Shown here piece by piece: positions 18,940-61,962 of a DNA stretch of 64,000 bases. This stretch comes from Macrostomum lignano (Eukaryota): NCBI GenBank assembly GCA_002269645.1, contig NIVC01003659.1, positions 1-64,000 of the forward strand, written 5' to 3'. The number at the start of each line of letters is the position of its first letter. The stretch's first letter is position 1. The position numbers were made by a program, and so were the translations under genes. A model generated the notes under the pieces. It saw only the letters and a program-made list of their open reading frames with translations, was not told the origin of the DNA and did not search any database.

Positions 18940-19075
18940 TCAGGCACGCATTCATACACACGCTCACACAGGATGTACAGAGGCCCTGAATTTCTTCTAA
19001 TCGTCAGGCACGTACACTCTCTGTGCCTTGTGGGTTGGCCCTCATGCAGGGTGTGAATCGCGCGACAACCCCGGA
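18940..19075 (-). mobile_element. SINE core fragment, same family as the SINE at 52021
   Basis: Reverse complement GGCCAACCCACAAGGCACAGAGAGTGTACGTGCCTGACGATT..GGCCTCTGTACATCCTGTGTGAGCGTGTG aligns by eye with 52157-52240. Confidence 0.65.
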
Positions 19076-25854: not shown

Positions 25855-40276
<14,422 letters not shown>

Positions 40277-42613: not shown

Positions 42614-44556
42614 TCGATAACGTTGTCGGCCCAGACGACTAGAATCGCCGAGACATCCCATCCGGCTCCCTTCCTTGGGTCCCAGGGGATAAAGGGATAA
42701 AATGGGGATCTCATGTCAACTTAAGGCTCTGGAATGGAGCCCGAAGTTCAGCTCCGGCCCAAACCGACTGCAATCGATAACTTGTCGGCCCAGACGACTA
42801 GAATCGCCGAGACATCCCATCCGGCTCCCTTCCTTGGGGTCCCAGGGGATAAAGGGATAAAATGGGGATCTCATGTCAACTTAAGGTCTGGAATGGAGCC
42901 CGAAGTTCAGCTCCGGACCAAACCGACTGCAATCGATAACTTGTCGGCCCAGACGACTAGAATCGCCGAGACATCCCATCCGGCTCCCTTCCTTGGGGTC
43001 CCAGGGGATAAAGGGATAAAATGGGGATCTCATGTCAACTTAAGGCTCTGGAATGGAGCCCGAAGTTCAGCTCCGGACCAAACCGACTGCAATCGATAAC
43101 TTGTCGGCCCAGACGACTAGAATCGCCGAGACATCCCATCCGGCTCCCTTCCTTGGGGTCCCAGGGGATAAAGGGGATAAAATGGGGATCTCATGTCAAC
43201 TTAAGGCTCTGGAATGGAGCCCGAAGTTCAGCTCCGGCCCAAACCGACTGCAATCGATAACTTGTCGGCCCAGACGACTAGAATCGCCGAGACATCCCAT
43301 CCGGCTCCCTTCCTTGGGGTCCCAGGGGATAAAGGGGATAAAATGGGGATCTCATGTCAACTTAAGGCTCTGGAATGGAGCCCGAAGTTCAGCTCCGGCC
43401 CAAACCGACTGCAATCGATAACTTGTCGGCCCAGACACTAGAATCGCCGAGACATCCCATCCGGCTCCCTTCCTTGGGGTCCCAGGGATAAAGGGGATAA
43501 AATGGGGATCTCATGTCAACTTAAGGCTCTGGAATGGAGCCCGAAGTTCAGCTCCGGACCAAACCGACTGCAATCGATAACTTGTCGGCCCAGACGACTA
43601 GAATCGCCGAGACATCCCATCCGGCTCCCTTCCTTGGGGTCCCAGGGGATAAAGGGGATAAAATGGGGATCTCATGTCAACTTAAGGCTCTGGAATGGAG
43701 CCCGAAGTTCAGCTCCGGCCCAAACCGACTGCAATCGATAACTTGTCGGCCCAGACGACTAGAATCGCCGAGACATCCCATCCGGCTCCCTTCCTTGGGG
43801 TCCCAGGGATAAAGGGGATAAAATGGGGATCTCATGTCAACTTAAGGCTCTGGAATGGAGCCCGAAGTTCAGCTCCGGCCCAAACCGACTGCAATCGATA
43901 ACTTGTCGGCCCAGACGACTAGAATCGCCGAGACATCCCATCCGGCTCCCTTCCTTGGGGTCCCAGGGGATAAAGGGGATAAAATGGGGATCTCATGTCA
44001 ACTTAAGGCTCTGGAATGGAGCCCGAAGTTCAGCTCCGGCCCAAACCGACTGCAATCGATAACTTGTCGGCCCAGACGACTAGAATCGCCGAGACATCCC
44101 ATCCGGCTCCCTTCCTTGGGTCCCAGGGGATAAAGGGATAAAATGGGGATCTCATGTCAACTTAAGGCTCTGGAATGGAGCCCGAAGTTCAGCTCCGGCC
44201 CAAACCGACTGCAATCGATAACTTGTCGGCCCAGACGACTAGAATCGCCGAGACATCCCATCCGGCTCCCTTCCTTGGGGTCCCAGGGGATAAAGGGATA
44301 AAATGGGGATCTCATGTCAACTTAAGGCTCTGGAATGGAGCCCGAAGTTCAGCTCCGGACCAAACGACTGCAATCGATAACTTGTCGGCCCAGACGACTA
44401 GAATCGCCGAGACATCCCATCCGGCTCCCTTCCTTGGGGTCCCAGGGATAAAGGGATAAAATGGGGATCTCATGTCAACTTAAGGCTCTGGAATGGAGCC
44501 CGAAGTTCAGCTCCGGACCAAACCGACTGCAATCGATAACTTGTCGGCCCAGACGA
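42614..44556 (+). repeat. 161-bp satellite array, ~12 copies (left arm of the inverted structure)
   Basis: Unit TCGATAACTTGTCGGCCCAGACGACTAGAATCGCCGAGAC..GGGGATCTCATGTCAACTTAAGGCTCTGGAATGGAGCCCGAAGTTCAGCTCCGG(C/A)CCAAACCGACTGCAA; several single-base indels. Confidence 0.97.
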
Positions 44557-45093: not shown

Positions 45094-47637
45094 CCCAAGG
45101 AAGGGAGCCGGATGGGATGTCTCTGCGATTCTAGTCGTCTGGGCCGACAAGTTATCGATTGCAGTCGGTTTGGGCCGGAGCTGAACTTCGGGCTCCATTC
45201 CAGAGCCTTAAGTTGACATGAGATCCCCATTTTATCCCCTTTATCCCCTGGGACCCCAAGGAAGGGAGCCGGATGGGATGTCTCGGCGATTCTAGTCGTC
45301 TGGGCCGACAAGTTATCGATTGCAGTCGGTTTGGGCCGGAGCTGAACTTCGGGCTCCATTCCAGAGCCTTAAGTTGACATGAGATCCCCATTTTATCCCC
45401 TTTATCCCCTGGGACCCCAAGGAAGGGAGCCGGATGGGATGTCTCGGCGATTCTAGTCGTCTGGGCCGACAAGTTATCGATTGCAGTCGGTTTGGGCCGG
45501 AGCTGAACTTCGGGCTCCATTCCAGAGCCTTAAGTTGACATGAGATCCCCATTTTATCCCCTTTATCCCCTGGGACCCCAAGGAAGGGAGCCGGATGGGA
45601 TGTCTCGGCGATTCTAGTCGTCTGGGCCGACAAGTTATCGATTGCAGTCGGTTTGGTCCGGAGCTGAACTTCGGGCTCCATTCCAGAGCCTTAAGTTGAC
45701 ATGAGATCCCCATTTTATCCCCTTTATCCCCTGGGACCCCAAGGAAGGGAGCCGGATGGGATGTCTCGGCGATTCTAGTCGTCTGGGCCGACAAGTTATC
45801 GATTGCAGTCGGTTTGGTCCGGAGCTGAACTTCGGGCTCCATTCCAGAGCCTTAAGTTGACATGAGATCCCCATTTTATCCCCTTTATCCCCTGGGACCC
45901 CAAGGAAGGGAGCCGGATGGGATGTCTCGGCGATTCTAGTCGTCTGGGCCGACAAGTTATCGATTGCAGTCGGTTTGGTCCGGAGCTGAACTTCGGGCTC
46001 CATTCCAGAGCCTTAAGTTGACATGAGATCCCCATTTTATCCCCTTTATCCCCTGGGACCCCAAGGAAGGGAGCCGGATGGGATGTCTCGGCGATTCTAG
46101 TCGTCTGGGCCGACAAGTTATCGATTGCAGTCGGTTTGGGCCGGAGCTGAACTTCGGGCTCCATTCCAGAGCCTTAAGTTGACATGAGATCCCCATTTTA
46201 TCCCCTTTATCCCCTGGGACCCCAAGGAAGGGAGCCGGATGGGATGTCTCGGCGATTCTAGTCGTCTGGGCCGACAAGTTATCGATTGCAGTCGGTTTGG
46301 GCCGGAGCTGAACTTCGGGCTCCATTCCAGAGCCTTAAGTTGACATGAGATCCCCATTTTATCCCCTTTATCCCCTGGGACCCCAAGGAAGGGAGCCGGA
46401 TGGGATGTCTCGGCGATTCTAGTCGTCTGGGCCGACAAGTTATCGATTGCAGTCGGTTTGGTCCGGAGCTGAACTTCGGGCTCCATTCCAGAGCCTTAAG
46501 TTGACATGAGATCCCCATTTTATCCCCTTTATCCCCTGGGACCCCAAGGAAGGGAGCCGGATGGGATGTCTCGGCGATTCTAGTCGTCTGGGCCGACAAG
46601 TTATCGATTGCAGTCGGTTTGGTCCGGAGCTGAACTTCGGGCTCCATTCCAGAGCCTTAAGTTGACATGAGATCCCCATTTTATCCCCTTTATCCCCTGG
46701 GACCCCAAGGAAGGGAGCCGGATGGGATGTCTCGGCGATTCTAGTCGTCTGGGCCGACAAGTTATCGATTGCAGTCGGTTTGGTCCGGAGCTGAACTTCG
46801 GGCTCCATTCCAGAGCCTTAAGTTGACATGAGATCCCCATTTTATCCCATTTATCCCCTGGGACCCCAAGGAAGGGAGCCGGATGGGATGTCTCGGCGAT
46901 TCTAGTCGTCTGGGCCGACAAGTTATCGATTGCAGTCGGTTTGGGCCGGAGCTGAACTTCGGGCTCCATTCCAGAGCCTTAAGTTGACATGAGATCCCCA
47001 TTTTATCCCCTTTATCCCCTGGGACCCCAAGGAAGGGAGCCGGATGGGATGTCTCGGCGATTCTAGTCGTCTGGGCCGACAAGTTATCGATTGCAGTCGG
47101 TTTGGTCCGGAGCTGAACTTCGGGCTCCATTCCAGAGCCTTAAGTTGACATGAGATCCCCATTTTATCCCCTTTATCCCCTGGGACCCCAAGGAAGGGAG
47201 CCGGATGGGATGTCTCGGCGATTCTAGTCGTCTGGGCCGACAAGTTATCGATTGCAGTCGGTTTGGTCCGGAGCTGAACTTCGGGCTCCATTCCAGAGCC
47301 TTAAGTTGACATGAGATCCCCATTTTATCCCCTTTATCCCCTGGGACCCCAAGGAAGGGAGCCGGATGGGATGTCTCGGCGATTCTAGTCGTCTGGGCCG
47401 ACAAGTTATCGATTGCAGTCGGTTTGGTCCGGAGCTGAACTTCGGGCTCCATTCCAGAGCCTTAAGTTGACATGAGATCCCCATTTTATCCCCTTTATCC
47501 CCTGGGACCCCAAGGAAGGGAGCCGGATGGGATGTCTCGGCGATTCTAGTCGTCTGGGCCGACAAGTTATCGATTGCAGTCGGTTTGGTCCGGAGCTGAA
47601 CTTCGGGCTCCATTCTGGTGCTTAAGTTGACATCCCC
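45094..47637 (-). repeat. 161-bp satellite array, ~16 copies, inverted relative to the left arm
   Basis: Reverse complement of the same unit; ends in a variant CTTAAGTTGACATCCCC followed by TTA. Confidence 0.97.
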
Positions 47638-47949
47638 TTACATTAACTGTGATTAACAGAAACTCAAATGGGCAGATGAGTTGCAACTGAGGCTTTGTGA
47701 CCTCATTAAATAAATGCATGATGCAGACTGTTGCAGCAGGCTTGAATAATATTCGACTGGCTTTCTGAACTTGAATTTTGTAGTGATCCGCTAGTTTGGT
47801 GTTAGGCGTCGCACTTGGTCAGTAGTTTCCCTCGCCCTCGCCCTCGCCCTGGGGTCGCTGTTTGCCGCTGGTCAGCTTACTGGTGGCCTGTTTCCCCTTG
47901 ACTGGTGACTTGCTCACATGACAGACCTTGTTTTCTTGAAGTCCTAAAA

Positions 47950-48179
47950 GTGCAGTAAACATGTTTACTGCACTCGCTGGTCTGTGTTTACGGCAGAATC
48001 ACTTGCCTAAGGCCCATTCCTTCTCTAAGGAAAGGAGTGACTCATGTTTCTAAAAATAGATACTGAGTCACAACCTAGTGCACTCTGCCAGGAGACCCCA
48101 AGTGACGTCAGGTCTAAAAATAGAACAAAGTCACCAGGTCTTGTGCGTTGGGGCAGTGGAGAATCCCGCGCTATAAATA
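47950..48179 (+). promoter_or_regulatory. Pol II promoter/enhancer: FOX palindrome, 2x AP-1, 2x MEF2, CRE, TATA
   Basis: 24-bp palindrome GTGCAGTAAACATGTTTACTGCAC (47950-47973); TGACTCA 48038; CTAAAAATAG 48050; TGAGTCA 48064; TGACGTCA 48103; CTAAAAATAG 48114; TATAAATA 48172. All are exact consensus matches. Confidence 0.72.
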
Positions 48180-48196
48180 CAGACCCCCTCACCCTT

Positions 48197-48457
48197 TGTC
48201 GGATTTCCATCCTCCAATTATTTGTACTTTCTGTTTTGCAATTCAGCCTTGTACTTTTCAGTTAGCCGACTCCCTTCGTCTGCCATGCTCTTCCCCACAG
48301 ACAATCTCAATCGTTAATTCACCATAGATTATACAACTAACCTGTTCATTCTGTTAGTATAAATACAAGTTAAACTCGCGGATTAAGCCCTTCACCTTTT
48401 TTCTTTCTGCACCACTAATAACATATTATTAGTTATTAGTTTATTGTCTATTCGACA
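48197..48457 (+). repeat. 5' LTR (261 bp)
   Basis: Matches 54541-54564 plus 55217-55455 with about 8 substitutions by eye (~3%). Confidence 0.95.
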
Positions 48458-48476
48458 ATTTTGGTGGCAGAGCGTC

Positions 48477-51400
48477 ATGGTCATCACACGATCGATAACT
48501 GACCAATCTGGCGACCAGACCCATCAGTCCCAGAATGACCACAGCACAGCCTCTGCAGAAGCGACCACTGCCACGGAGCAGCCACCCGTCGAAGCCAGCG
48601 ACCCCCCACCAGCCGCTTCATCCGCCACATCTGCTCCTCCCGCTGCTCCTTCTACGGCTCCGATATCTGCAACAGCTCCCACTGCCTCCGTCGACGTCAA
48701 CGCCCTCCTGACCGCAATGACTGCGATGATGCAGCAGAACCAGCAGCTCATTCAGCAGCTCGCCGCCACCGTCCGTCCAGCCTCGACACCAGTTGCCTCA
48801 ACGCCCGCATCAGATGCGCACGATCCGGCCGGGCTCATCCGCTCCACTGTCCTCAAAAAGGTCCGTCTCCCGACATTCGACGGCACCGACCCTGCTGCAT
48901 TTCCCGGGTTCTGGGACGCCTTCATCTACCGCGTCGACCAATCCAGCCTCAACGACGTCGACAAGTTCGAGGCACTCCGCGGTCTTCTATCCGGCCCCGC
49001 CCTCAGGAAGCTGGGCGCCCTTGATGCCTACCAACCCAACGCCTACGCCGAGGCCTGCCGCGTTCTCCAGGCTAACTACGCTGACGCGCAGGAGCAGAAA
49101 GACACCTGCTTCCAACGCCTCCTCGGACTATACTGCAGCTCTGCCTCCGACGTAGACGAGCTCGAGACCTTTACCGACGCCCTCCGACTCGCTACCGGCC
49201 AGCTCCTCCGCCTTGGCGAGCCCGCCTTCACCCTCGACGGCTACGTCTACGCTCTCTGGAGCCGCCTCCCGATCGAGCTGCAGAACGAGATCGGCAACCT
49301 TCGTGCTGCCAACGGGCAGCCTCTCGTGCCAACCATGACACAGCTCCAGAGCCACCTTGACTGTAAACTTAGGACTCTCCGGGCTGCCGCCACGACTACA
49401 CCGACAGCGCCCTTTGCTACCGCAGACTTCCTGGGCAACACTGACTCTCAGCCGCCAATAGCGCGCTACCCCAGTGATCGCCGCCAGTCCACCACTCCTC
49501 GCACGGGCGCCACCCTTCACCACGTCACTCTGCACGCTTCGCTCCTACCACCAACCAGCAACAGCACAAGCCCAGCCACTCATGCCTCTATTGCAACAGC
49601 TCCGAACATACCACCATGTCCTGCTGCAACATCCGCAAGCCCGATGACCGGCTTAAAATCGTTCGAAATAAGAACCTTAGCCACAACTGCCTTCGCCGAC
49701 ACCAAACCAAGGACTGCCGCGACAACCGACGCTGTCGTATGTGCGACGCCGCACACCACACCTCGCTGTACGGGGCCTCCTTCGACGCCCGCTCCAGCCA
49801 TCGCTCACCACCTAAGACAGCCCAAAACGCTCACGTTAATTCAAGTGGTGACGCCGACTCCAAAGAGACAGCCAACTCCCTAGTCTCTGCCGCAGCCGAC
49901 GGAGGTCTCGTGCCGACCATCATGGCTACCTTCCGGGCGAAGGCCGTCAACCCAAAAGATGGCCGCTCCGTCGACTGCACAATTCTTCTCGACTCAGGCT
50001 GCTCGTACTCGCATCTCGACGGCACCGTTGCCCACAAGCTTGGCCTCAAATCCACCAAGAGACTCTCGATAGCCACCTCCACCTTCCACTCAGAGTCCAG
50101 GCGTCAGATAACGGCGGACCTCGTCAGTTTCGACTTCCAGGCCCCAGACGGTCGCCGCTGGCCAATCACAGCCCTCGCCTCCGACCAGCTAGCAGCCCCG
50201 ATCCAAATACCGGCCGTAAAGCCCCTGAAGATGTCCTTAACACCCTGGGCAGTGTCAACAACGGCGTCTGCAACCTCCCGCCCGACCACGATACAGACGG
50301 TACCCTCGACCTCATCCTCGGTGGTGACGTGAACCAGTTACTCACCGGTCTTGCAATTTCTGTCCTCGCTCTTCGACCAACTCTAACGGCCTACCTGACG
50401 CCCTTCGGAGCTATCCTCAACGGTGCCATCAACGACACGGGTGCCCGCAACATCAACAGCTTCCTCGGGTCCTCTCAGGTTCTCGTCGCTAACACCTACC
50501 TCAACATCAACAACGACAACCTTCACCTCGACCGACTCCTGGACCACATGTCCAACCTTGAAGCTCTCGGCATAGCAAAGGATGCTGGAAGGCCGGACCC
50601 CAAGGATGACAGGCTCACTAAGCACCTGCTCGACACCATCACGCGTGATTCTGATGGTCGAAGCTCAGTCGACTTGCCATTTAAAATCAGCGCTGAACTG
50701 CTCTCATCAAACTTCGGGCAAGCCTTAGGACGAGCGCAGGCCACGCACCGGCGACTAAGCCTCCCGGAGCGAGAAGCCTACTACGCCGAGTTCGAAAAAC
50801 GGAAAGCCGAAGGAGTCTTAGAGCGAGTTGACCCCAAGCGAGACAACAACGGGCAGATCCTTCACGTTCTACCGCACTTCCCTGTCATCAAGGAAAGCTC
50901 GAATACCACAAAAATTCGCCCCGTTGTCGACGCATCAGCAAAGACCTCTCTTGCCGGCGCTACGCTCAATGATTTTCTAGAGCCTGGACCAAACCTGTTG
51001 ACCTCTCTACTCCAAATCCTTTTAGTCCATCGCGCCCACCGCTTCGCCATCTCGTCCGACTTCCAAGCTGCGTTCTATCAGATCGGGGTCAATGAACGCA
51101 TCAATCTACGTATCATTGTCCCAAGAGACATCTCTCAACCGCTCATCGACGGCAACTTTGAAAAATGGCGCCTCACCCGCATCGTCATGGGTGCTTCTCC
51201 CAGCCCGTGGATCCTTCTCGCAGTCCTGCACAAGATTTGTCTCGACGCTCTTAACTCTGGAGAAACATGTCTGACTCGTACCGAGCTCGAACGCGTCATA
51301 GGTGGTCTCTACTTCGACAATCTAGAATCGTCGGAACCGACACTGAGGAGGACGCCGCCCGACTAGTCCGTGGACTTTGCGAGCTCTTCCGGCGTGCCTG

Positions 51401-54100
51401 CTTTCATCTTTGCGAGTTTGCCACAAACCTGCCCAGCTGCCTCTCCACGATTCCCAATGAGGATTGCATCCGCAGCCACAAATTCGGCCTTCTGGGTCTC
51501 ACCTGGGCCACCAACGCAGACCGCATCACCCTCAAGAAGCCCAACCTGCCACGCCCAGAGGAACTGACCCGCCGAAAGATATGCCAAGGTGTCCACACCC
51601 CCTACGACCCAGCCGGTTACGCCGCTCCACTCATACTCAGCGGTCGTCTTCTATACCGCCACGCTTTCCAAGCCACCGATCACTGGGACGAGATCGCCAG
51701 CTCTGAAATCAGAGACGCCTGGGCAAAGCTCGCACCAGATTCTCCGCCTCGACGAAGTCACCGTGCCGCGCTTCGCCATTAAGGACGCCAGCTACTCAGT
51801 TCGTCTCGTTATTTTATCTGACGGTGCTCCTGGGGCCTATGGTTTTGCCATCTACGCCTGGCAGTGCGTCGGTTCCAGCGTCTCCTGCCGCCTCATCTTC
51901 GCTAAAGCTCGACTCACCCCAGCCACCAAGCAAGGCCTCCTCGTCACGGTTCCGCGACTCGAACTCTGGGCAGCCCTCAGTCATCCTCGACGCAATGCGC
52001 AGCCACTTGCAGTTCGAAGGGGGGGGGGCGTAGCCCAGCGGTAGCGCAGCTGCTCTGGTGTGCCAGCGACCCAGGCTCGATTCCAAGTGCAGTCACATTA
52101 ATTTGGGGCTGAATTGGAATCTCGGCTTGGCTCTGCTCGTGCAATTAACGGCCTTGAGAGCCAACCCCCCAAGGCGCAGTGAAGTGTACATGCCTAACGA
52201 TAATATACAGTTAGGGCCGCTGTACACTCCTGTGTGAGTGTGTGCCTGTGTACGTATCCGCGCGCTTGTGTGCCTGCTCAGGGGAGTCGGTGGAATGGGC
52301 AGTAATGCCTCTCGCCGGTTGGGTGCCTATGTCGCTTAAAGTGCGCCAGGGTGCACACAACCCCCTGCCTCTAATAAAAAAATGCAGTTCGAAGGCGTCA
52401 CCCACTTCATCGACAGCCAGATCGTCCTCTACTGGCTTGCCAACGGTACCCAACTCCGAAACTACGAGGCACGTCGCATTCAGCAGATTCTCGATTCTGA
52501 CGTCACTCGTGATTACCGGTACGTCCCAACAGCCGATAACCCAGCCGACCACTGTACCAAACCGCTGAGCCTTGATCGACTATTAGCGTCCAACTTCTAC
52601 GAGGGCCCCGCCTTCCTTAAGCGGCCGTTTCTCGATTGGCCTTCCTGGACCGCTGCGGCGCCTGACCCTTGCCTTCTGGTCGGTGTCCCTGCTAGGAAGA
52701 AGCCTACAGCACTCGGCGCTACTCTAGTCGCTGCTGGATCTACTGCCTGTGCCACGCCTGGCCACCTGAGCCTCGAGCGCTCCAACCACCTTGAACACAT
52801 TCTCGGCGTCACCTGCTATCTCCTCCAACTGAAGGCCGACATCCAACGCCGCCCATTCTCGAAAGACTTCCCGCCTTCTCACGCCGAGCGCCAGGCGGCC
52901 CTTCTCCTGTGGATCCGAGCAGCCCAAACTGTGTGCTACGGGGCCGTCATCCGAGCCCTCGAGTCTGGCCGGTCCAAGTCTGAGAAGATCGTCGCCTAGC
53001 TGGATCTTCATCTTTGCGACGGCTTCATCCGCCTCGGCAGCCGCTTCGCCAACGCTTCCATGGATGAGGACAGCAAGTACCCGCTCCTGCTGCCGCCCGG
53101 CCATCGCCTGACCCGGCTGCTCATCCTGCTCATCCATCGCCAGAACAGCCACGCTGGTGTCTCCACCGTTCTCGCCATGCTCCGCGACAAATTGGGTGCC
53201 TAAAGGCCTCCTAACCGTCCGTGATGCGCTCTCCGACTGTATCCAGTGCCGCCTCGCCAAAGGCTCAACTCGCGCGCCGCCCGCACATGGCCAACTGCCC
53301 AAGGAGCGCCTAGACACCGAAGCTGGTCCATTTGCTTCCGTACTCGTCGACCAGCTCGGGCCCGTCTTCACCTACGACCATAAGCTCGGAGTCTCCACCA
53401 AGCGCTGGGCCCTGCTCATCACCTGCTGCACTACGAGAGCCCTCCACATCGAGATCCTCTACGACTACTCCGCTGACGCCGTCCTCCACGCATTCGAGCG
53501 CTTCTGGTGCCGCCGCGGTCTCACCAAATGCACTGTCTACCTAGACCAGGCCACCGCCTTCCAAGCCGCAGGAAAGTTCATCGAAAGCCACATCGCCACC
53601 GACTTCCAAAAAAAGCTCCACAACAACCTTCGGCCACTCGCCGCCTCGCGACCCCTGGTGTTTAAGTTCGCGCCAGCCCGAGCCCACTGACACCAAGGGG
53701 CGGTCGAGCGCCTCGTCGCCCTCACGAAGTCCAGCCTTCGTCCCGCCCTCTGGCGCAAGCGCATCTCCGATGAGGAACTGCACACTCTCCTCGTCAAGAT
53801 CGAGGCCATCCTCAACTGCCGGCCGCTGACCAATGTCTCCAACGACCCGGCCGATCCGTCACCGCTGACTCCGGCTCACCTCCTCGGGGTTGGCCCTCAC
53901 CTGTTACTTCCGGTCCACGACGACACCTTCCTGCCTGCCGGTACTTCCACTGCTGACCGCCTCCGAGCTCTTCATCGCCGCCGCGATGCCATCCTCAACG
54001 AGTTCTGGGGCCGGTAGAGACAGGAGTACATCAGGCATCAGCCATCTCCGGTCTGTCCATCTACAAGAACGACGTCGCCACAGACAGCACACCAGCGACG
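48477..54100 (+). pseudogene. BEL/Pao gag-pol, broken by frameshifts, stops and a SINE insertion
   Basis: Domains are spread over ORFs 48444-49883, 49616-50332, 50329-51366, 51267-51782, 51589-52044, 52382-52999 and 53157-53690. In-frame TAG/TGA occur at positions where Trp/Gln is expected (e.g. AH*HQGAVERLV, FWGR*RQEY). Confidence 0.9.
52021..52382 (+). mobile_element. tRNA-derived SINE (362 bp) nested in BEL pol, with 13-bp TSD and A-tail
   Basis: TSD TGCAGTTCGAAGG at 52008-52020 and 52383-52395; A box TAGCCCAGCGG; B box GGCTCGATTCC; ends AATAAAAAAA. Confidence 0.92.
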
Positions 54101-54564
54101 GCAGCAGCTTTCAACCCGGCCAAGCCTGTCTGCTGGCTGAACTTACGCCTCGAGCGACATGGAAAGTGCCGGATTCTACAGCTGCATCCGGACCCAACCG
54201 GTGTCGTCCGCTATGTGACCATCCGCACCGTATCTGGCCACGATGTCCGGCGATCCATCGGACACCTCGTACCCCTCGAGTGCGACATCAACGGCCCACC
54301 TGCCGACCCACCTGCCGGCCCGCCTACCGGTCCGCCTGCCTGCTAGTCCACCTGTTGGCCCGCCGACTGGCCAATCACCCCGCGACAAGCGCGCTATACG
54401 CCGGCAAAAAATCCGTGACGGAATTTTTGACGCCTGAACTGAACTAAATAACCTAATACTCACAGTCACAAGTTAATCATTCTACTGTTTTACCGTTCAA
54501 AATCCCCGCTATCTATCGTTACCTGTTGGCCCCCCGAGCCTGTCGGATTTCCATCCTCCAATTA

Positions 54565-55216
54565 CACTCAGCAACATTTAAAACGCAACACTCTAACTAG
54601 AAGAAAAATCAACTCACTCAGAAGAGTCAAAGCGCATAGTCTATGGTTCAAATCGAGCTTCAGAAACGCGTGTAGCTTCCTCTCGCAAGTAACAGGGCGA
54701 TGACTATGGACTGTTTTCAGATAGAGTGATCCAGCTGAGAGAATGGTTCAACAGATGACAGACGCGGAAAGATGGCGAGCAGTCGGAATGTTGGAAGCAG
54801 GTTGTACTCTTCGAACAGTTGCGAACCACTTCGGGAGGTCGCCTTCAACAGTTTTACGTCTGCTACAGAAGAGCAGAGCACCTGCGTACTCTTCGGTGGC
54901 CCTCAAGATCCCCTGATATGAACCCAATTGAACATGTCTGGGACTTTATCAAGCGGAGTGTTCAACGGCAGAATCCGCCGCAGACAGTCGCTGAACTGCG
55001 AAACGCTGTTGCTAACGCGTGGCAGGAAATTCCCCAGGACTTTTTTCGACGCCTTGTTCTGGGAATGCCACGTCGAGTCAACGCCCTGTTACTTGCGAGA
55101 GGAGGCTACACGCGTTTCTGAAGCTCGATTTGAACCATAGACTATGCGCTTTGACTCTTCTGGGTGAGTTGATTTTTCTTCTAGTTAGAGTGTTGCGTTT
55201 TTAATGTTGCTGAGTG
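54565..55216 (+). mobile_element. Internally deleted Tc1-like element nested in the 3' LTR
   Basis: ~100-bp TIRs (CACTCAGCAACATT..GAGCTTCAGAAACGCG / reverse complement) and TA TSD. The N-terminal HTH (MTDAERWRAVGMLEAGCTLRTVANHFGRSPSTV) is fused directly to the C-terminus WPSRSPDMNPIEHVW..GGYTRF, so the catalytic middle is missing. Confidence 0.93.
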
Positions 55217-55463
55217 TATTTTTACTTTCTGTTTTGCAATTCAGCCTTGTACTTTTCAGTTAGCCGACTCCCTTCGTCTACCATGCTCTCCCCCACAGAC
55301 AATCTCAATCGTTAATTCACCATAGATTATACAACTAACCTGTTCATTCTGTTAGTATAAATACAAGTTAAACTCGCGGCTTAAGCCCTTCACCTCCTTC
55401 CTTTCTGCACCACTAATCACATATTATTAGTTATTAGTTTATTGTCTATTCGACACCCTTGGC

Positions 55464-55469
55464 TCAGTC
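55464..55469 (+). promoter_or_regulatory. Candidate initiator (TCAGTC) belonging to the TATA box at 48172
   Basis: Removing the element and one TSD gives TATAAATACAGACCCCCTCACCCTTGGCTCAGTC, placing the Inr A 30 nt after the first T of TATA. Confidence 0.6.
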
Positions 55470-56262
55470 AAGGAGGCTTCTAATTTCTGATTTCAGTGTT
55501 CTCTAAGTGCTTTGTCTGTCTGAACTAGAACGCCCGTTCTGTCTGCGTACGTTAATTCATTGCTATTGATCTGACCGACCCATCTGAAGACAAACCTCAA
55601 GCCTGCGAGAGGCTAGCACAGCCCCTCCCTTCCACCCACCAAGCCAGGCAGGATCTGCTAACGAGACGCCTTGTACGTTAAGCTGCAAATCTGCACGTTA
55701 TTTCGTCCCGACGGAGACTCACCTCACCGAAGGCGGAGACCCAACGGACTGGTGGCAGCACTACCGACGCTGCTAATAGCTAATAAGAAGGCTTCCGAGA
55801 AGAGGCTCGAGATTTAAAGTAAAGCTTAAGTGCCTGCAAATCGGGAAGCAAACAGCCTGTACTTCGATTGGAAGGGTGGCGTACGTATAGGGGGTGAACA
55901 ATCGACACAGAAGTGTGGAAATAAAATTTAGAGTGCGAGAGTGGATAAAATACAATGCTGTGGCGGTGCGCATAAAGTCAGCAACCAGCTGGAATGCATC
56001 AACAGCTGCCGAGACACTCCGGTCCCCCTGCCCGACTGACCCTCTCTCAGAACAAAAGTTTGCTCCGTTCCCAAAGCCGTGTCGCACCCTAAAGAAGCGT
56101 AGAGAGGCAGCTCACGATGACAGCTCCTACGGGGCGACGATCTCGATTGCTCTTCTTGCCATTTTGTTCTGCTGTTAGCACGGTCTGGCTCAGCAGAGCC
56201 TCGTGTACTTGTTCGGTGTCGGAAGATCTGGCCCTGGGTCGAGTGCGGCTCCCTCGCCTTCG

Positions 56263-56385
56263 CTCCTACAGAACTGACAGCTGGTGTGGGTGTTGAATAC
56301 ACAGTCTGCTCCTACAGAACTAACAGCTGGTGTGGGTGCTGATGTACAGTCTGCTCCTACAGAACTGACAGCTGGTGTTGGTGCT
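56263..56385. repeat. ~45-bp tandem repeat, 3 copies
   Basis: CTCCTACAGAACTRACAGCTGGTGT at 56263, 56309 and 56354. Confidence 0.8.
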
Positions 56386-56514
56386 GAACTCCGGACACAA
56401 GGGTCTTGATCAAGCAAGTTGTTTGGTTTAAAGGTCAGGTCATCCATTAAAATTAAAAAGGAACTATCGATCAGTTGATTCTGGGTGTAGAGTGGCTTGT
56501 GGGCCGGGAGTTGC

Positions 56515-56660
56515 CATGCGTGCCTGCGTACACTACTGGCGCGCTTGTATGTACGGAATGGAGTCGGCGGAATGAGCAGAATTGCCTCAGCGCTGGTTAG
56601 TGGGCCGATGTCATCGAAGGTGCAGCGTTAGGGTGGCCACAGCGGTCCTGCTATTATTAT
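56515..56660 (+). mobile_element. Diverged SINE/LINE 3' tail related to the 52021 SINE, with (TAT)n tail
   Basis: GTGCCTGCGTAC..GCGCGCTTGT..GGAGTCGGCGGAATGAGCAG..TGCCTC aligns by eye with 52243-52350. Confidence 0.55.
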
Positions 56661-57075
56661 GATCACCTTATTGACAAGTGGGTTATAAAATAATACTATA
56701 TTTAAGGCCGAGCAACTTCAAGGAAAAAAACGGCCAGGGAAACTTCTAAGAAGTGTCAAGCGGCCTGCTTTCTGTATATTTTACCGATAAAAATCAGAAG
56801 TATACAGTATTTTATCAATAAGCCATTGTGTGCCTTGCTGTCTTTTTTATCGAGTCATTCACGCGTGTGGTGCTAAATTACATGTAGAGCATGTCTTTGT
56901 ACGCATTTTCTACGCTTGCGACACTTACAAATACTACAAAGCGAAAAATAATAGAGTAAAATGTCTACTATGCTACTGAAAATCACTGTCAGTAGTTAAC
57001 TGGGCGAGTTGTTTTCACCAAACTGTTAAAAAAGACAATTCAAGATTCCACATTAATTTTATTGTCTCGACGAAA

Positions 57076-60000
57076 TCAGACCATCGACTTGGACTTGTCG
57101 ATTCTGACCCGACGTGTCAGGTAAAACCAGGCGACGGAGGAGGCCAGGTACAGGAAAGCTGACACCCAGGAGGTGGCCACCGACCAGCCAATGGACACGG
57201 TGCGGTAGGTGTCAGTGCAAAACTGGCGGATGGCAGAGCGGAATTTTACAGAAAATCAATTTCCGGTTCAGGGACTTGAAAATATACGAGTAATTACCAT
57301 GTAGATAAACCGGAAGTGGATAAACAGGCGTCACGGAGATAAACCGGAAGTGGATAAACAGGCGTCACGGAGATAAACCGGAAGTGGATAAACAGGCATC
57401 ACTGAGATAAACCGGAAGTGGATAAACAGGCGTCACGGAGATAAACCGGAAGTGGATAAACAGGCGTCACGGAGATAAACCGGAAGTGGATAAACAGGCA
57501 TCACTGAGATAAACCGGAAGTGGATAAACAGGCGTCACGGAGATAAACCGGAAGTGGATAAACAGGCGTCACGGAGATAAACCGAAAGTGGATAAACAGG
57601 CGTAACGGAGATAAACCGGAAGTGGATAAACAGGCGTAACGGAGATAAACCGGAAGTGGATAAACAGGCATGACTGAGATAAACCGGAAGTGAATAAACA
57701 GGCATGACTGAGATAAACCGGAAGTGGATAAACAGGCGTAACGGAGATAAACCGGAAGTGGATAAACAGGCGTAACGGAGATAAACCGGAAGTGGATAAA
57801 CAGGCATCACTGAGATAAACCGGAAGTGGATAAACAGGCATCACTGAGATAAACCGGAAGTGGATAAACAGGCATCACTGAGATAAACCGGAAGTGAATA
57901 AACAGGCGTCACTGAGATTAACCTAGCATCTATCAGGATTAATAAACATGGAGAAGCCTTGAAGCTTCAGCACGTACTTTCATTTTACTTAATTGGTTAA
58001 CTTCTGTACCTGTCCTCTTGTCTGCTCAGTGGCTGTGCAAGCATCGCATATTTATTGACTGAATAGTTGCACAAATAAAATCTGCTGCAAAGGGGCCACG
58101 CCTTACGAATACAAAAATAGAGCTTTCTTTGAGTCTTGGCTTACTATATATATAATCTTTTCTATAGTTGGGGCAGTACTTCAAAGAACAGTCAATTTTT
58201 AGTAACGATAGGAATCGGTTAAGACAGATCGATGACGAATTACAAAGTTTTTTTAGGATTGTAATTGATAGTGTTTATTGCTTGTAGAGTACGAGCTGCA
58301 GGCAAAGGTTCATGCAGTTAAGTACTCCTATAGTTACTGTTTTAACTAAATGGAACTCTTTTTATCTTACAGTAATAAACCCATACGACTCAAATTCCAA
58401 ATAGCTCAAATCCCATAGTGCTCAAATCCCATAGTGCTCTAATATCATAGTGCTCAAATCCCATTGTGCTCAAATCCCATAGTGCTCAAATCCCATAGTT
58501 CTCAAACCCCATTGTGCTCAAATCCCATAGTGCTCAAATCCCATACAGTGCTCAAATCCCATAGCACTCAAAGTTACCTGCTCAGGCGTTTTCACCAGGT
58601 TATAGCATGTGCACTGCGGGCACTCTTCAATCTGAGGTCGGCGAGTCATTCTTGAGGCTTTCTCGTGCTCGATGGAGTTGCTGAAGATCACAAAAATTCC
58701 TACATGGAGTAGAGATAAAAATAATAAGTCGAGTTTATGTGATTTTGCATAAAAAATGAGCATCATTGGCTTATCCGCACATCTAGAAACACATATCCGC
58801 ATATCTAGACACATGCACATATATGCACATCTAGACACACATATCTGCACATCTAGATACACATACCCGCTCATCTAGACACACATACCCGCACATCTTG
58901 ACGCACATATCCGCACATCTTGACACACATATCCGCACATCTAGACACACATATCCGCACATCTAGACACACGTATCCGTACATCTAGACACACATATCC
59001 GCACATCTAGACACACGTATCCGCACATCTAGACACACATATCCGCACATCTAGACACACATACCCGCACATCTAGACACACATATCTGCGCATCTAGAC
59101 ACACATATCCGCACATCTAGACACACATATCCGCACATCTAGATACACATATCCGCACATCTAGACACACATATCCGCACATCTAGACACACATACCCGC
59201 ACATCTAGACACACATATCTGCCCATCTAGACACACTAAACCGCCAAGCTCACCAGCAGTGAGATGCAGGACTCCAGTCACCATAATCGAGGGCACAATT
59301 TTAGCCAGCACTCCAATCGTTCCAGTGATGACGGAGGAGATGACGCAGATGAGCACCACTATGCAGCAGGCCATCGTGTTGTTTTGCATCTCTGCGATTA
59401 GGGTTGCAGGGCGGAGAGGCTTTGCATTTTAAGCTTTACAACGATACGCCTATGCATGTACACTCTCGTTAGCATTTCTGGGTTCGACATTTAAAAAGAA
59501 TACTACTGCGATTCACTTTCTCCTTTGGATGACTTTAGAGAAGAATAGACGTCCACAAGAAGACTCAGAAGCTAGTTTCGCAACAATAGGACTCAAGAGT
59601 GGCGCCACAATAGGACTCAGGATTGGCGCCGCAATAGGACTCGGGAGCTAGTGGCGCCATAATAGAACTCAAGAGTGGCGCCACAATAGGACTCAAGAGT
59701 GGCGCCACAATAGGACTCAAGAGTGGCGCCACAATAGGACTTGAGAGTGGCGCCATAATAGGACTCAAGAGTGGCGCCACAATAGGACTTGAGAGTGGCG
59801 CCACAATAGGACTCAAGAGTGGCGCCACAATAGGACTTGAGAGTGGCGCCACAATAGGACTCAAGAGTGGCGCCACAATAGGACTTGAGAGTGGCGCCAC
59901 AATAGGACTTGAGAGTGGCGCTACAATAGGACTGGATCAGGAGTGGCGCCACAACAGGACTTGAGAGCGGCGCCACAATAGGACGCAGGTGTGGCGCAAC

Positions 60001-61962
60001 AGTAGGACTCAGGAGCTATGAGTGGTAGCGTAACTGAGGGATCAAACTAAAGAAGTCAGTCGAACTTACTCAAAGCTTGTGCTCAAACTTACTCATTATC
60101 TGCGACTCCGCAGTGTTTTCGGTGGCATCCAGAATGTCCCTGGCGTTGGTGTAGCCAGAGATGTAGTCAAAGCAGCTGTTGTTGGTGATTAAAAAGCTGA
60201 AGTTTTTGCAGTAGGTGTCGTAATCTGCGTTCAGTGCATCTGAAATTTTTTGAACGATCATTTGTTTTGTAGTCTGAATTGGAATCATTTCGGGACTAAT
60301 TGGAATCATTTCGGGACTAATTGGAATCATAGGACTAATTTGAATCATTTCGGGACTACATGCAATCATATCGGGGCTGATTGGAATCATCTCGGTACTA
60401 ATTGGGATCATTTCGGGACTTATTGGAATCATTTCGGGACTAATTAGAATTATATCAGGACTAATTTGAATCATTTCGGGACTAATTGGCATCATATCGG
60501 GACTAATTGCAATCATTTCGGGACTAACAAGAATCACTCGGGGACTCTTAAACAAACCGTCAATAGGTCTACATTTAGATCAGTAAATATGATTGACTGG
60601 CCCAGGTGCATTGGCGAGCACCTGAGAGGTCTGTTATAAATATTTCATTTAATCAGCACCCGCTTCCGCGACGAAGTAGCGCGCACGGAAGGTGTGGGCC
60701 AGTGCGTTTAATAAATCAGGAAGCGGGCTGTCCTTCCTCAGGTCCTGTAAGCCTGTTTTCGATGAGTCGAAATTTTATATTTCTCGGCGCTGGAGCAGGG
60801 GATAGGCATAGCGGAGGCGTGACTTTGATGCAGCAGTGCACGCAGAGCAGTGTCCGCTTCCTTGAGTAGCTTTAATGAATCGGATTGAGTAGCTTAGGGA
60901 ATCGGATTGAGTAGCTTAGGGAATCGGATTGAGTAGCTTAGGGAATCGAATTGAGTAGCTTAGGGAATCGGATTGAGTAGCTTAGGGAATCGGATTGAGT
61001 AGCTTAGGGAATCGGATTGAGTAGCTTAGGGAATCGGATTGAGTAGCTTAGGGAATCGGATTGAGTAGCTTAGGGAATCGGATTGAGTAGCTTAGGGAAT
61101 CGGATTGAGTAGCTTAGGGAATCGGATTGAGTAGCTTAGGGAATCGGATTGAGTAGCTTAGGGAATCGGATTGAGTAGCTTAGGGAATCGGATTGAGTAG
61201 CTTAGGGAATCGGATTGAGTAGCTTAGGGAATCGGATTGAGTAGCTTAGGGAATCGGATTGAGTAGCTTAGGGAATCGGATTGAGTAGCTTAGGGAATCG
61301 GATTGAGTAGCTTAGGGAATCGGATTGAGTAGCTTAGGGAATCGGATTGAGTAGCTTAGGGAATCGGATTGAGTAGCTTAGGGAATCGGATTGAGTAGCT
61401 TAGGGAATCGGATTGAGTAGCTTAGGGAATCGGATTGAGTAGCTTAGGGAATCGGATTGAGTAGCTTAGGGAATCGGATTGAGTAGCTTAGGGAATCGGA
61501 TTGAGTAGCTTAGGGAATCGGATTGAGTAGCTTAGGGAATCGGATTGAGTAGCTTAGGGAATCGGATTGAGTAGCTTAGGGAATCTGATTGAGTAGCTTA
61601 GGTCTGGTCTATTATAAACTCCATCACTCACCCTCAGTATTGACCCTGTCGCACAGGCTCCACAGGCTTGAGTAGAGGTTGAGCAGGCAGTAGCCGGTGC
61701 TGTTGGACGTCAGCAGGATCATACCAGTCAGCGTGGTACTCTCCGCGTCCGAGTACAGCAGCTTCGGAGAGCCGTAGTAACTCGACGCCGATTGCATCAC
61801 GCTGGTGTTCACCAAATTAAAGTTGAACGTCACGGCGTCCCAGTTGCTAGTGGCAACGCTGAGCACCAGGAACAGCAGGCTGACGGCTGAGAAACTCGAC
61901 GCAACGGCGATCACTCCGATGCTGAATGTCTGGCAGGCCTTGGCTTCCGGGTTCTTCTGCAT
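57076..61962 (-). CDS. Claudin/PMP22/EMP/TMEM178-superfamily four-pass membrane protein, 5 exons
   Basis: Minus exons 61962-61632, 60239-60093, 59391-59254, 58699-58578 and 57222-57076 with consistent phases. TM1 ..SLLFLVLSVATSNW, ECL1 signature SLWSLC..C, two central TMs (MACCIVVLICVISSVITGTIG; IMVTGVLHLTAGIFVIF), and last TM SIGWSVATSWVSAFLYLASSVAW. Confidence 0.87.
57304..57920. repeat. 34-bp minisatellite, ~18 copies (intron 4)
   Basis: Unit GATAAACCGGAAGTGGATAAACAGGCGTCACGGA. Confidence 0.96.
58405..58570. repeat. 16-bp minisatellite (intron 4, abutting the exon 4 donor)
   Basis: Unit TGCTCAAATCCCATAG. Confidence 0.9.
58780..59236. repeat. 22-bp minisatellite, ~20 copies (intron 3)
   Basis: Unit GCACATCTAGACACACATATCC. 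Confidence 0.95.
59575..59995. repeat. 24-bp minisatellite, ~17 copies (intron 2)
   Basis: Unit CAATAGGACTCAAGAGTGGCGCCA. Confidence 0.95.
60278..60540. repeat. 21-bp minisatellite, ~12 copies (3' part of intron 1)
   Basis: Unit GGAATCATTTCGGGACTAATT. Confidence 0.92.
60872..61602. repeat. 22-bp nearly perfect minisatellite, ~33 copies (intron 1)
   Basis: Unit GAATCGGATTGAGTAGCTTAGG. Confidence 0.97.

What the first reader, a model, noticed from the sequence alone, without database searches (positions are those of the whole stretch)
48172..55470. BEL/Pao retrotransposon inserted between a TATA box and its initiator
Seen: TSD CCCTT on both sides. The reconstructed empty site is TATAAATA-cagaccccctcaCCCTTggc-TCAGTC, with the Inr A 30 nt from the TATA start, which is canonical core-promoter geometry. 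The element is in the same orientation as the promoter. Inference: the insertion moved the host TSS 7.3 kb away, and would let the MEF2/CRE/AP-1 promoter fire into the 5' LTR and produce stress- or activity-induced retroelement RNA. It also suggests integrase targeting of the pre-initiation region, as known for some other LTR families.
Basis: partly seen in the sequence, partly recalled or inferred. Interest (0 to 1): 0.8.

Follow-up and report, generated by a model that had tools for sequence, protein, structure and literature searches.

The report
Dead BEL/Pao retrotransposon splitting a promoter
A long-dead BEL/Pao retrotransposon in the flatworm Macrostomum lignano really does sit between a TATA box and its initiator, but this is one ordinary, decayed insertion and gives no evidence that the element family aims at promoters.

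Summary
The sequence observation is confirmed and its coordinates refined. A 7,259-bp LTR retrotransposon occupies 48197-55455 on the + strand. It has 261-nt LTRs (TGT...ACA, 96.9% identical) and a perfect 5-bp duplication, CCCTT. Removing it restores TATAAATA-N22-TCAGTC, with the initiator A 30 nt after the first T. Just upstream lies a dense cluster of consensus sites: a FOX palindrome, 2 AP-1, 2 MEF2 and 1 CRE.

Gag DUF1759, the Pao Peptidase_A17 domain, an LLDSG protease motif, Cys-His boxes and colinearity with an intact 1,929-aa relative make it BEL/Pao. The host is Macrostomum lignano.

The copy is dead. It has at least six frameshifts and seven in-frame stops, a tRNA-derived SINE nested in RNase H, and a deleted Tc1-like element nested in the 3' LTR.

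No gene could be tied to the promoter. There is no ORF, protein homologue, Pfam or Rfam hit downstream, and a convergent gene ends 1.6 kb away.

Integrase targeting rests on a single insertion. Rough genome arithmetic predicts roughly 6-40 such insertions by chance. No empty-site allele or sister copy could be retrieved. This is an ordinary insertion of modest interest.

The parts
47949..47974 (.). 26-nt perfect palindrome AGTGCAGTAAACA|TGTTTACTGCACT holding two inverted forkhead-type TGTTTAC sites. A third TGTTTAC is at 47985.
48038..48123 (+). Host regulatory module made of two diverged ~65-bp tandem units. Sites: AP-1 TGACTCA 48038-44, MEF2 CTAAAAATAG 48050-59, AP-1 TGAGTCA 48064-70, CRE TGACGTCA 48103-10, MEF2 CTAAAAATAG 48114-23.
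   Evidence: It holds the only CRE and the only two strict MEF2 sites in the window.
48172..48179 (+). Host TATA box TATAAATA, now 25 bp upstream of the 5' LTR.
48192..48196 (.). Left copy of the target-site duplication CCCTT (positions -10 to -6 of the reconstructed promoter).
48197..48457 (+). 5' LTR, 261 nt, TGTCGG...TCGACA, with its own TATAAATA at 48358-48365.
48462..48474 (+). Primer-binding-site-like TGGTGGCAGAGCG, 4 nt after the LTR. The tRNA it pairs with was not determined.
   Evidence: read from the sequence
48546..49496 (+). gag (DUF1759), an intact frame inside ORF 48444-49883. A frameshift near 49475-49500 disconnects it from the nucleocapsid.
49500..50218 (+). Nucleocapsid with three Cys-His boxes (two carry a substituted ligand) and protease with the ILLDSG motif. 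A frameshift near 50220 follows.
50224..51364 (+). Reverse transcriptase (YFDN at the YxDD position). It ends at an in-frame stop at 51364, where the reading frame is also lost.
51567..51978 (+). Pao 'Peptidase_A17' / RNase H region, split over two frames (shift near 51740; stop at 51565).
52021..52382 (+). Nested tRNA-derived SINE with A-box and B-box-like motifs and an A-rich tail. It is flanked by a 13-bp duplication TGCAGTTCGAAGG (52008-20 and 52383-95) and interrupts RNase H.
52394..53191 (+). End of RNase H and the integrase N-terminal zinc-finger region. In-frame stop at 52997; frameshift near 53191.
53193..54431 (+). Integrase core and C-terminal (DUF5641-equivalent) region. Stops at 53688, 54015, 54138 and 54216; the frame is lost after about 54040.
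54541..54564 (+). First 24 nt of the 3' LTR, ending in the TA used by the Tc1-like insertion.
54565..55216 (+). Nested, internally deleted Tc1/mariner-type element: 652 bp, 141-bp TIRs 97% identical, TA duplication, DDE_3 remnant ORF 54819-55121.
55219..55455 (+). Remainder of the 3' LTR (55217-18 is the duplicated TA). Its TATAAATA at 55356-55363 is 110 bp upstream of the host Inr A.
55456..55460 (.). Right copy of the target-site duplication CCCTT.
55464..55469 (+). Initiator-like TCAGTC (A+1 = 55466), displaced 7.3 kb from its TATA box.
57079..61962 (-). Context: a convergent five-exon gene for a four-TM, claudin-like membrane protein (UniProt A0A1I8G7P1, M. lignano). Its stop codon is 1.6 kb from the insertion site.

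Best explanation
A BEL/Pao LTR retrotransposon, originally about 6.2 kb, integrated once, in sense orientation, into the 20-bp gap between the TATA box and the initiator of what was most probably a real, inducible RNA polymerase II promoter in Macrostomum lignano. The integration duplicated CCCTT at positions -10 to -6.

**Shown.**
- The element's anatomy, family, boundaries and duplication.
- The canonical TATA-30-Inr geometry of the restored site.
- A non-random cluster of FOX, AP-1, MEF2 and CRE consensus sites directly upstream.
- The heavy decay of the copy: 3% LTR divergence, at least six frameshifts, seven in-frame stops, a nested SINE and a nested Tc1-like element.

**Inferred.**
- The insertion was a chance, or at most open-chromatin-favoured, event and not a targeted one.
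- It was tolerated because the transcription unit was dispensable or redundant in this neopolyploid, highly duplicated genome. The 3' LTR, which puts its own TATAAATA 110 bp upstream of the old start, may also have taken over as core promoter.
- Today the host TATA could still start transcripts about 5-7 nt inside the 5' LTR. Any such RNA is non-coding debris from a dead copy, not a source of new elements.
For: **Anatomy.** LTR pair, termini and duplication are.

**Family.**
- DUF1759 and split Peptidase_A17 hits.
- The RT ORF finds 11,852 relatives, the best at 47-57% identity over its length.
- Those relatives have the architecture DUF1759 - Peptidase_A17 - Integrase_H2C2 - DUF5641.
- The element is colinear with the intact 1,929-aa relative P0007.

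**Decay.** Frameshifts and stops are. The Tc1-like element with TA duplication, 141-bp TIRs and a DDE_3 remnant is.

**Promoter.**
- It is the only TATAWAWR of 31 in the window with TCAGT at +30; the chance is about 0.7% per TATA.
- The window's only CRE and only two strict MEF2 sites, plus 2 AP-1 and 3 FOX sites, lie within 230 bp.
- Two diverged 65-bp units keep the sites identical while the spacers have drifted.
- The module is unique in the window and has no terminal repeats around it.

**Host and redundancy.**
- The neighbouring gene matches M. lignano A0A1I8G7P1 at 98-100% per exon. Two further near-identical or diverged paralogous products (P0002, P0004) exist.
- Mlig_3_7 has 180 Mb of non-repetitive blocks at least 95% identical (PMC5730564).

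**Chance expectation.** This is my inference from PMC5730564 figures of 764 Mb, 21% LTR retrotransposons and 72,846 genes.
- About 3-8 x 10^4 LTR insertions are implied.
- TATA-to-Inr gaps make up about 0.02-0.05% of the genome.
- Together these give roughly 6-40 such insertions per genome without any targeting.

**Precedent.** Drosophila roo, also Pao-like with a 5-bp duplication, has nine independent promoter insertions at one gene. Two of them donate the transcription start. Yet only 15.2% of roo copies lie in promoters or 5' UTRs (PMC4982627).
Against: - No transcript, gene or coding potential was found downstream of the Inr, so promoter function is inferred from motifs alone.
- Whether flatworm Pol II uses a TCAGT-type initiator was not established. 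The published M. lignano promoter sequences held here are truncated.
- Neither an empty-site allele nor other copies of the family could be examined, so chance versus targeting was argued and not measured.
- No convincing polypurine tract lies in front of the 3' LTR.
Confidence: 0.7

Rival explanations
1. Targeted integration. The integrase of this BEL/Pao family is tethered to TFIID or the pre-initiation complex, or recognises TATA-bent DNA. It therefore inserts preferentially between the TATA box and the start site, as Ty3 does at Pol III starts or Tf1 at Pol II promoters.
For: - The insertion lies exactly at -10 to -6 of a canonical TATA/Inr pair, in sense orientation.
- Promoter hot-spots are known for a Pao-like element (roo at CG18446, PMC4982627) and for Tf1 (PMC5741268).
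Against: - The evidence is a single insertion, and chance alone predicts roughly 6-40 such cases per genome (inference from PMC5730564 numbers).
- No chromodomain or other tethering module was detected in three intact relatives.
- Genome-wide, roo shows no promoter preference (15.2%, PMC4982627).
- No other copy with flanks could be recovered to test the idea.
Confidence: 0.05
2. The flank is not a working host-gene promoter. It is an orphan or decayed regulatory relic, an enhancer without its own transcript, or part of another unrecognised repeat such as an old solo LTR. On this view the TATA/Inr split has no functional meaning.
For: - No ORF, homologue, Pfam or Rfam hit lies downstream. The first ATG is 490 nt away with a 6-codon ORF.
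- The surroundings are a repeat-rich neighbourhood. A 161-bp satellite ends 540 bp upstream. A 45-bp minisatellite and a SINE fragment lie 0.8-1.2 kb downstream. A convergent gene ends 1.6 kb away.
- LTR U3 regions also carry TATA boxes plus AP-1 and CRE-type sites.
Against: - The site cluster is far beyond chance, and the sites are conserved between the two diverged 65-bp units.
- The TATA-Inr spacing is exact.
- The sequence is unique in the 64-kb window, with no terminal inverted or direct repeats.
- Many M. lignano transcripts are trans-spliced or non-coding, so the lack of an ORF next to the start is weak evidence (PMC5730564).
Confidence: 0.2
3. LTR promoter swap. The insertion persisted because the 3' LTR took over as the core promoter of the downstream unit. 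Transcripts would start about 30 nt after the LTR TATAAATA at 55356 and run through the last ~70 nt of the LTR into the old 5' end. The upstream enhancer cluster would then act mainly on the 5' LTR.
For: - The 3' LTR TATAAATA is 110 bp upstream of the old Inr, in the same orientation.
- There is no canonical AATAAA in the LTR; the only variant, AATAAC, is mutated in the 3' LTR.
- Two roo solo-LTRs donate the transcription start of CG18446 (PMC4982627).
Against: - There are no expression data.
- The LTR promoter's activity and specificity are unknown.
- The enhancer cluster is now 7.3 kb away, behind a competing 5' LTR promoter.
- No downstream gene has been identified.
Confidence: 0.12

Closest known systems
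[quoted passage not shown]
   Same: - Both belong to the same superfamily and both make a 5-bp target duplication.
- Both sit within tens of bp of a transcription start, changing the spacing of promoter motifs.
- In both cases the LTR is able to donate a start site.
   Different: - The roo cases are solo LTRs in a TATA-less DPE promoter, polymorphic, with nine independent events and measured effects.
- Here there is one full-length but dead copy, splitting TATA from Inr, with no expression data and no known gene.
Sinbad and Saci-1, BEL/Pao elements of the flatworm Schistosoma mansoni (PMC554778), and the five Bel/Pao families catalogued in M. lignano (PMC12801592)
   Same: - About 6.2-6.3 kb, with short TGT...CA LTRs.
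- Cys-His boxes, a DSG protease, and the order PR-RT-RH-IN.
- A flatworm host.
   Different: - This copy is degenerate and carries two nested elements.
- Whether it belongs to one of the five catalogued M. lignano families could not be checked, because their consensus sequences are not held here.
Targeted LTR elements: Ty3 at Pol III starts, Tf1 at Pol II promoters (PMC5741268), and Drosophila 17.6/297 inserting into TATA-like ATAT, including a histone H3 TATA box. The Ty3 and 297 cases are cited from my own knowledge and were not checked here.
   Same: An LTR element lies within a core promoter.
   Different: Those preferences are shown by many independent insertions and, for Ty3 and Tf1, by known tethering factors. 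Here there is a single insertion, a CCCTT target rather than ATAT, and no tethering domain found.
Classical Ty insertions between upstream promoter elements and the start site, for example his4-912 in yeast (from my own knowledge)
   Same: Sense or antisense LTR insertion separates upstream promoter elements from the initiation site. It either abolishes expression or puts the gene under LTR control.
   Different: Those are experimentally characterised alleles of a known gene; this one is not.

Membership tests
BEL/Pao LTR retrotransposons | Paired LTRs with TG...CA termini and a short (typically 5-bp) target-site duplication | tested here: met
   261-nt LTRs, TGTCGG...TCGACA, 96.9% identical. 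CCCTT is present on both sides. A 5-bp duplication is as described for roo (PMC4982627).
BEL/Pao LTR retrotransposons | Gag of the DUF1759 type with a triple Cys-His nucleocapsid motif | tested here: met
   DUF1759 scores E = 2.5e-9. The three boxes align with those of intact P0007. They read CLYCNSSEHTTMSC, (S)HNCLRRHQTKDC and CRMCDAAHHTSLY, two of them with one ligand substituted. The motif definition is from PMC554778.
BEL/Pao LTR retrotransposons | Protease with the LLDxG/DSG motif | tested here: met
   ILLDSGCS is in ORF 49616-50332. The Pfam aspartyl-protease hit is weak (E = 0.003).
BEL/Pao LTR retrotransposons | Pao-specific Pfam domain Peptidase_A17 after the RT | tested here: met
   The domain is split over two frames, with E = 6.8e-9 and 3.1e-11.
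BEL/Pao LTR retrotransposons | Domain order gag-PR-RT-RH-IN with integrase zinc finger and DUF5641 C-terminus | tested here: met
   tblastn is colinear with P0007 residues 61-1929. P0007, P0006 and P0009 carry DUF1759, Peptidase_A17, Integrase_H2C2 and DUF5641. Pfam does not detect the integrase domains in the decayed window copy itself.
BEL/Pao LTR retrotransposons | RT groups with BEL/Pao in a phylogeny | not tested
   Only best-hit evidence is available; no tree was built.
Autonomous (coding-competent) retrotransposon copy | Uninterrupted gag-pol reading frame(s) and intact LTRs | tested here: not met
   There are at least six frameshifts and in-frame stops at 51364, 51565, 52997, 53688, 54015, 54138 and 54216. 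A SINE lies at 52021-52382 and a Tc1-like element at 54565-55216 in the 3' LTR.
TATA + Inr RNA polymerase II core promoter | TATA box with its first T about 30-31 nt upstream of the A of an initiator consensus | tested here: met
   In the reconstructed site, TATAAATA T1 is 30 nt upstream of the A of TCAGTC. It is the only such pair among 31 TATAWAWR sites.
TATA + Inr RNA polymerase II core promoter | Transcripts that start at the initiator | not testable with these tools
   No expression or cap data are available here. RAMPAGE data exist for M. lignano (PMC5730564) but are not held.
TATA + Inr RNA polymerase II core promoter | A transcription unit or gene downstream | tested here: inconclusive
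   No ORF, homologue, Pfam or Rfam match lies in 55461-57000. A non-coding, spliced or trans-spliced unit cannot be excluded.
Site-targeted LTR retrotransposons (Ty3/Tf1/297-like behaviour) | Many independent insertions at equivalent promoter positions | not testable with these tools
   There is only one copy in the window. Relatives were recovered only on short contigs without flanks. The metagenome scans were empty.
Site-targeted LTR retrotransposons (Ty3/Tf1/297-like behaviour) | Recognisable tethering module in integrase, such as a chromodomain | tested here: not met
   No such domain was found in P0006, P0007 or P0009 at E <= 0.001.
Tc1/mariner DNA transposon (nested element) | TA duplication, terminal inverted repeats, DDE transposase | tested here: met
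   TA lies at 54563-64 and 55217-18. The TIRs are 141 bp and 97% identical. A DDE_3 remnant scores E = 1.6e-7. The element is internally deleted.

The most novel reading that the evidence does not exclude
The integrase of this Macrostomum BEL/Pao lineage is guided to TBP/TFIID-bound core promoters and inserts about 10 bp upstream of the start site. That would make it the first BEL/Pao family with Pol II pre-initiation-complex targeting, and it would hard-wire new copies to inducible host promoters.
Probability: 0.04. Interest if true: 0.65.

Novelty: new member of a known kind. Interest (0 to 1): 0.25.

Why it matters
As it stands, this is a tidy textbook example. A retrotransposon cleanly separates a TATA box from its initiator in a regenerating-flatworm model, and it carries a datable stack of nested insertions: first BEL/Pao, later a SINE and a Tc1-like element.

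It would matter more in two cases.
- **Family-wide bias.** If copies of this family proved to be enriched in core promoters, that would be a new targeting mode for the least-studied LTR superfamily.
- **Induction.** If the FOX/AP-1/MEF2/CRE module proved to be an activity- or stress-inducible promoter, it would be useful for M. lignano transgenesis. It would also be a natural case of enhancer capture by an LTR.

Neither was shown here.

Tried and rejected
**Empty-site allele or paralogue**
- The neighbouring claudin-like gene was used as a handle. Its products P0001 and P0002 exist only in UniProt and have no DNA on record.
- A 789-aa concatenate of all flank ORFs, including junction-spanning ones, found no protein in the 5.8-billion-sequence database.
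- Exact-pattern scans of metagenome contigs with a promoter 24-mer and an LTR-end 21-mer found nothing.

**Other copies of the family, to test target preference**
- The gag search gave one UniRef-only hit at 63% identity. The candidate list was probably swamped by low-complexity words.
- The RT representative search gave relatives at 47-57% identity over the RT ORF, with higher identity only on partial matches (P0008 71%, P0014 63%). Their contigs are element-length or shorter and lack flanks (L001-L004). P0008 is not on record.

**A gene for the promoter**
- The ORF scan, Pfam, Rfam and tRNA searches of the downstream flank were all negative.

**The promoter as part of another mobile element**
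- No second copy lies in the window, and no inverted or direct terminal repeats surround it. The idea is rejected only weakly, because the rest of the genome could not be searched.

**Initiator usage in M. lignano**
- The cloned promoter sequences in PMC5730564 Supplementary Data 1 are truncated in the held text, so nothing could be learned from them.

**Pfam on the decayed RT and integrase ORFs**
- No hits were obtained even at E <= 5. Classification therefore rests on the DUF1759 and Peptidase_A17 hits and on colinearity with intact relatives.

**A coordinate correction**
- An early LTR end of 48464, taken from the repeat finder, was wrong. The LTR ends at 48457.

Full report
**1. What is in the sequence**

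Reading both ends and searching for repeats defines an LTR element at 48197-55455 on the + strand. It is 7,259 bp long.

- The 5' LTR is 48197-48457: 261 nt, TGTCGG...TCGACA.
- The 3' LTR is in two pieces. 54541-54564 is an exact copy of the first 24 nt. 55219-55455 is the remaining 237 nt.
- Between the pieces lies a 652-bp insert (54565-55216). It is flanked by a TA duplication and has 141-bp terminal inverted repeats that are 97% identical. It also holds a remnant ORF with a DDE_3 transposase hit. It is an internally deleted Tc1/mariner-type element.
- The two LTRs differ at 8 of 261 positions (96.9% identity, JC distance 0.031).
- CCCTT flanks the element on both sides (48192-96 and 55456-60).
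- A primer-binding-site-like TGGTGGCAGAGCG starts 4 nt after the 5' LTR. No convincing polypurine tract precedes the 3' LTR.

**2. Family and state of the element**

Several lines place it in BEL/Pao.
- Pfam finds DUF1759 in the gag ORF, and the Pao-specific Peptidase_A17 domain split over two reading frames.
- The RT ORF (50329-51366) has 11,852 relatives in the representative library. The best are 47-57% identical over its length.
- Three of these are intact polyproteins of 1,768-1,929 aa. Their architecture is DUF1759 - Peptidase_A17 - Integrase_H2C2 - DUF5641.
- tblastn of one of them (P0007) is colinear with the element from gag to the integrase C-terminus.
- The alignment shows three Cys-His boxes and an ILLDSG protease motif. 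Both are hallmarks listed for Pao-like elements in PMC554778.

The same alignment shows that the copy is dead.
- The frame changes near 49475-49500, 50220, 51364, 51740, 53191 and 54040.
- In-frame stops lie at 51364, 51565, 52997, 53688, 54015, 54138 and 54216.
- About 375 extra bases (the SINE and its duplicated target site) lie where P0007 has 20 residues.

That insert (52021-52382) is a tRNA-derived SINE.
- It starts with A-box and B-box-like motifs and ends in an A-rich tail.
- It is flanked by a 13-bp duplication, TGCAGTTCGAAGG.
- Related fragments occur elsewhere in the window, including at 56510-56660.

Without the two nested elements the retrotransposon would be 6,230 bp. That is close to Sinbad (6,287 bp; PMC554778) and to the relative in L001.

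I did not build any repaired or consensus version of the element.

**3. The target site**

Deleting the element and one CCCTT gives GCTATAAATACAGACCCCCTCACCCTTGGCTCAGTCAAGG.

This is more than chance.
- Among the 31 TATAWAWR sites in the window (both strands), it is the only one with TCAGT at +28 to +33. The chance per TATA box is about 0.7%.
- The 230 bp upstream hold the window's only TGACGTCA, its only two CTAAAAATAG sites, two TGASTCA sites and three TGTTTAC sites. Two of the TGTTTAC sites lie in a 26-nt perfect palindrome.
- The AP-1/CRE and MEF2 sites sit in two diverged ~65-bp tandem units. In these the sites are identical or equivalent while the spacers have drifted. That pattern fits constraint on the sites.
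- The module is unique in the window and is not bounded by terminal repeats.

I therefore consider a real Pol II promoter the most likely reading. The evidence is motif-based only.

**4. What the promoter would drive**

I could not attach a gene to it.
- The first ATG after the Inr is 490 nt downstream and opens a 6-codon ORF.
- Stop-to-stop ORFs on both strands of the flank, including two that span the restored junction, find nothing in the 5.8-billion-protein database, in Pfam or in Rfam.
- 0.8-1.2 kb downstream lie a 45-bp minisatellite and a SINE fragment.
- At 57079 a convergent five-exon gene for a four-TM claudin-like protein ends.

That gene identifies the organism. Its exons match Macrostomum lignano A0A1I8G7P1 at 98-100%. 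Two further M. lignano products (P0002, P0004) come from near-identical or diverged duplicates of the locus. This fits the published redundancy of the genome: 180 Mb in non-repetitive blocks at least 95% identical (PMC5730564).

The transcription unit may be non-coding. It may be spliced or trans-spliced to exons outside the window; 38.8% of the annotated genes in M. lignano are trans-spliced (PMC5730564). Or it may simply be defunct.

**5. Consequences of the insertion (inference)**

- The host TATA now lies 25 bp before the LTR. TATA-directed initiation at +30 would therefore fall at LTR nt 6-7 (48202-48203), with no initiator consensus there.
Each LTR has its own TATAAATA (48358 and 55356). 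The 3' one sits 110 bp upstream of the old Inr in the same orientation.
- The LTR has no canonical AATAAA. Read-out, or an LTR promoter swap, is therefore as plausible as read-in. Two roo solo-LTRs do exactly this at Drosophila CG18446 (PMC4982627).

**6. Targeting**

The claim that integrase targets pre-initiation regions cannot be supported from one insertion.

I tried to obtain other copies.
- The gag search returned a single UniRef-only protein.
- The closest representatives are on element-length Logan, JGI or ENA contigs without flanks, or are not on record.
- Two metagenome scans were empty.

Intact relatives show no chromodomain or other tethering module.

A rough expectation follows from published figures of 764 Mb, 21% LTR retrotransposons and 72,846 genes (PMC5730564).
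- These figures imply about 3-8 x 10^4 LTR insertions.
- TATA-to-Inr gaps make up about 0.02-0.05% of the genome.
- Together these give roughly 6-40 such insertions per genome by chance, before selection.

This is my estimate, not a measurement. In Drosophila, roo has a striking hot-spot at one promoter but no genome-wide promoter bias (15.2%; PMC4982627).

**7. Comparison and verdict**

The element is a degenerate member of BEL/Pao. This superfamily is already catalogued in M. lignano, with five families out of 137 (PMC12801592). I could not check which of the five it belongs to.

Insertion of LTR elements into core promoters, with loss or LTR take-over of initiation, is long known. Examples are the roo case above, and the yeast Ty alleles and Drosophila 297 at a histone TATA box, both cited from my own knowledge.

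- Novelty is low: a new member of a known kind.
- The most novel reading not excluded is PIC-directed integration by this lineage. I put it at about 4%.

**8. Limits**

- No eukaryotic genome or expression data could be queried beyond protein-handle look-ups.
- Promoter activity, the empty-site allele and family-wide target preference are all untested.

Noticed in passing
window 52021-52382 (duplications 52008-52020 and 52383-52395); related pieces at 18957-19044 (-), 30090-30146 (-) and 56510-56660 (+): A tRNA-derived SINE family with A-box and B-box-like motifs and an A-rich tail. One complete copy with a 13-bp target duplication is nested in the BEL/Pao RNase H region. ARAGORN does not call it as a tRNA.
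   Followed up: partly
window 54565-55216: An internally deleted Tc1-like element with unusually long (141-bp) terminal inverted repeats that overlap the end of the transposase ORF. It keeps the N-terminal helix-turn-helix and C-terminal DDE_3 pieces and is inserted at a TA in the 3' LTR.
   Followed up: partly
window 48035-48165 and 47949-47974: The promoter-proximal module is two diverged 65-bp tandem units. Each has a bZIP site, TCTAAAAATAGA and (G/A)AGTCAC. It is preceded by a 26-nt perfect palindrome with two forkhead-type sites. It is a candidate compact inducible promoter for M. lignano transgenesis.
   Followed up: partly
window 41863-42613, 42614-44556 and 45094-47633: A 751-N assembly gap abuts a 159/161-bp satellite. 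The satellite occurs as two arrays in inverted orientation (95-99% complementary) around a 540-bp spacer. This could be a real fold-back structure or a scaffolding artefact.
   Followed up: no
window 57079-61962 (-): A five-exon gene for a four-TM claudin-like protein (M. lignano A0A1I8G7P1). Its introns are filled with minisatellites of 16-34-bp units. The UniProt models P0001 and P0002 each miss an exon that the paralogue P0003 shows to be present (about 59398-59252).
   Followed up: partly
window 27533-29164 (-) and 19199-20014 (+): Host genes: a 543-codon uninterrupted exon of a BRSK/SAD-type kinase (UBA_BRSK and KA1_BRSK domains), and a 271-codon doublecortin-domain ORF.
   Followed up: no
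L001 (Logan SRR24204725 contig, 6,312 bp): A relative of the element with an uninterrupted 1,929-codon gag-pol ORF. Its first 30 nt are repeated at the contig end, which indicates a collapsed LTR. Its LTR also begins TGTCGG. It is probably a currently active BEL/Pao family in that sample's organism.
   Followed up: partly
window 3813-4436 (+): An ORF with a weak mariner-type Transposase_1 hit (E = 2.7e-5). It is another DNA-transposon remnant.
   Followed up: no
whole window: Minisatellite density is extreme: more than 20 separate tandem arrays with units of 15-171 bp in 64 kb. This fits the published 15% tandem-repeat content of the M. lignano genome.
   Followed up: no
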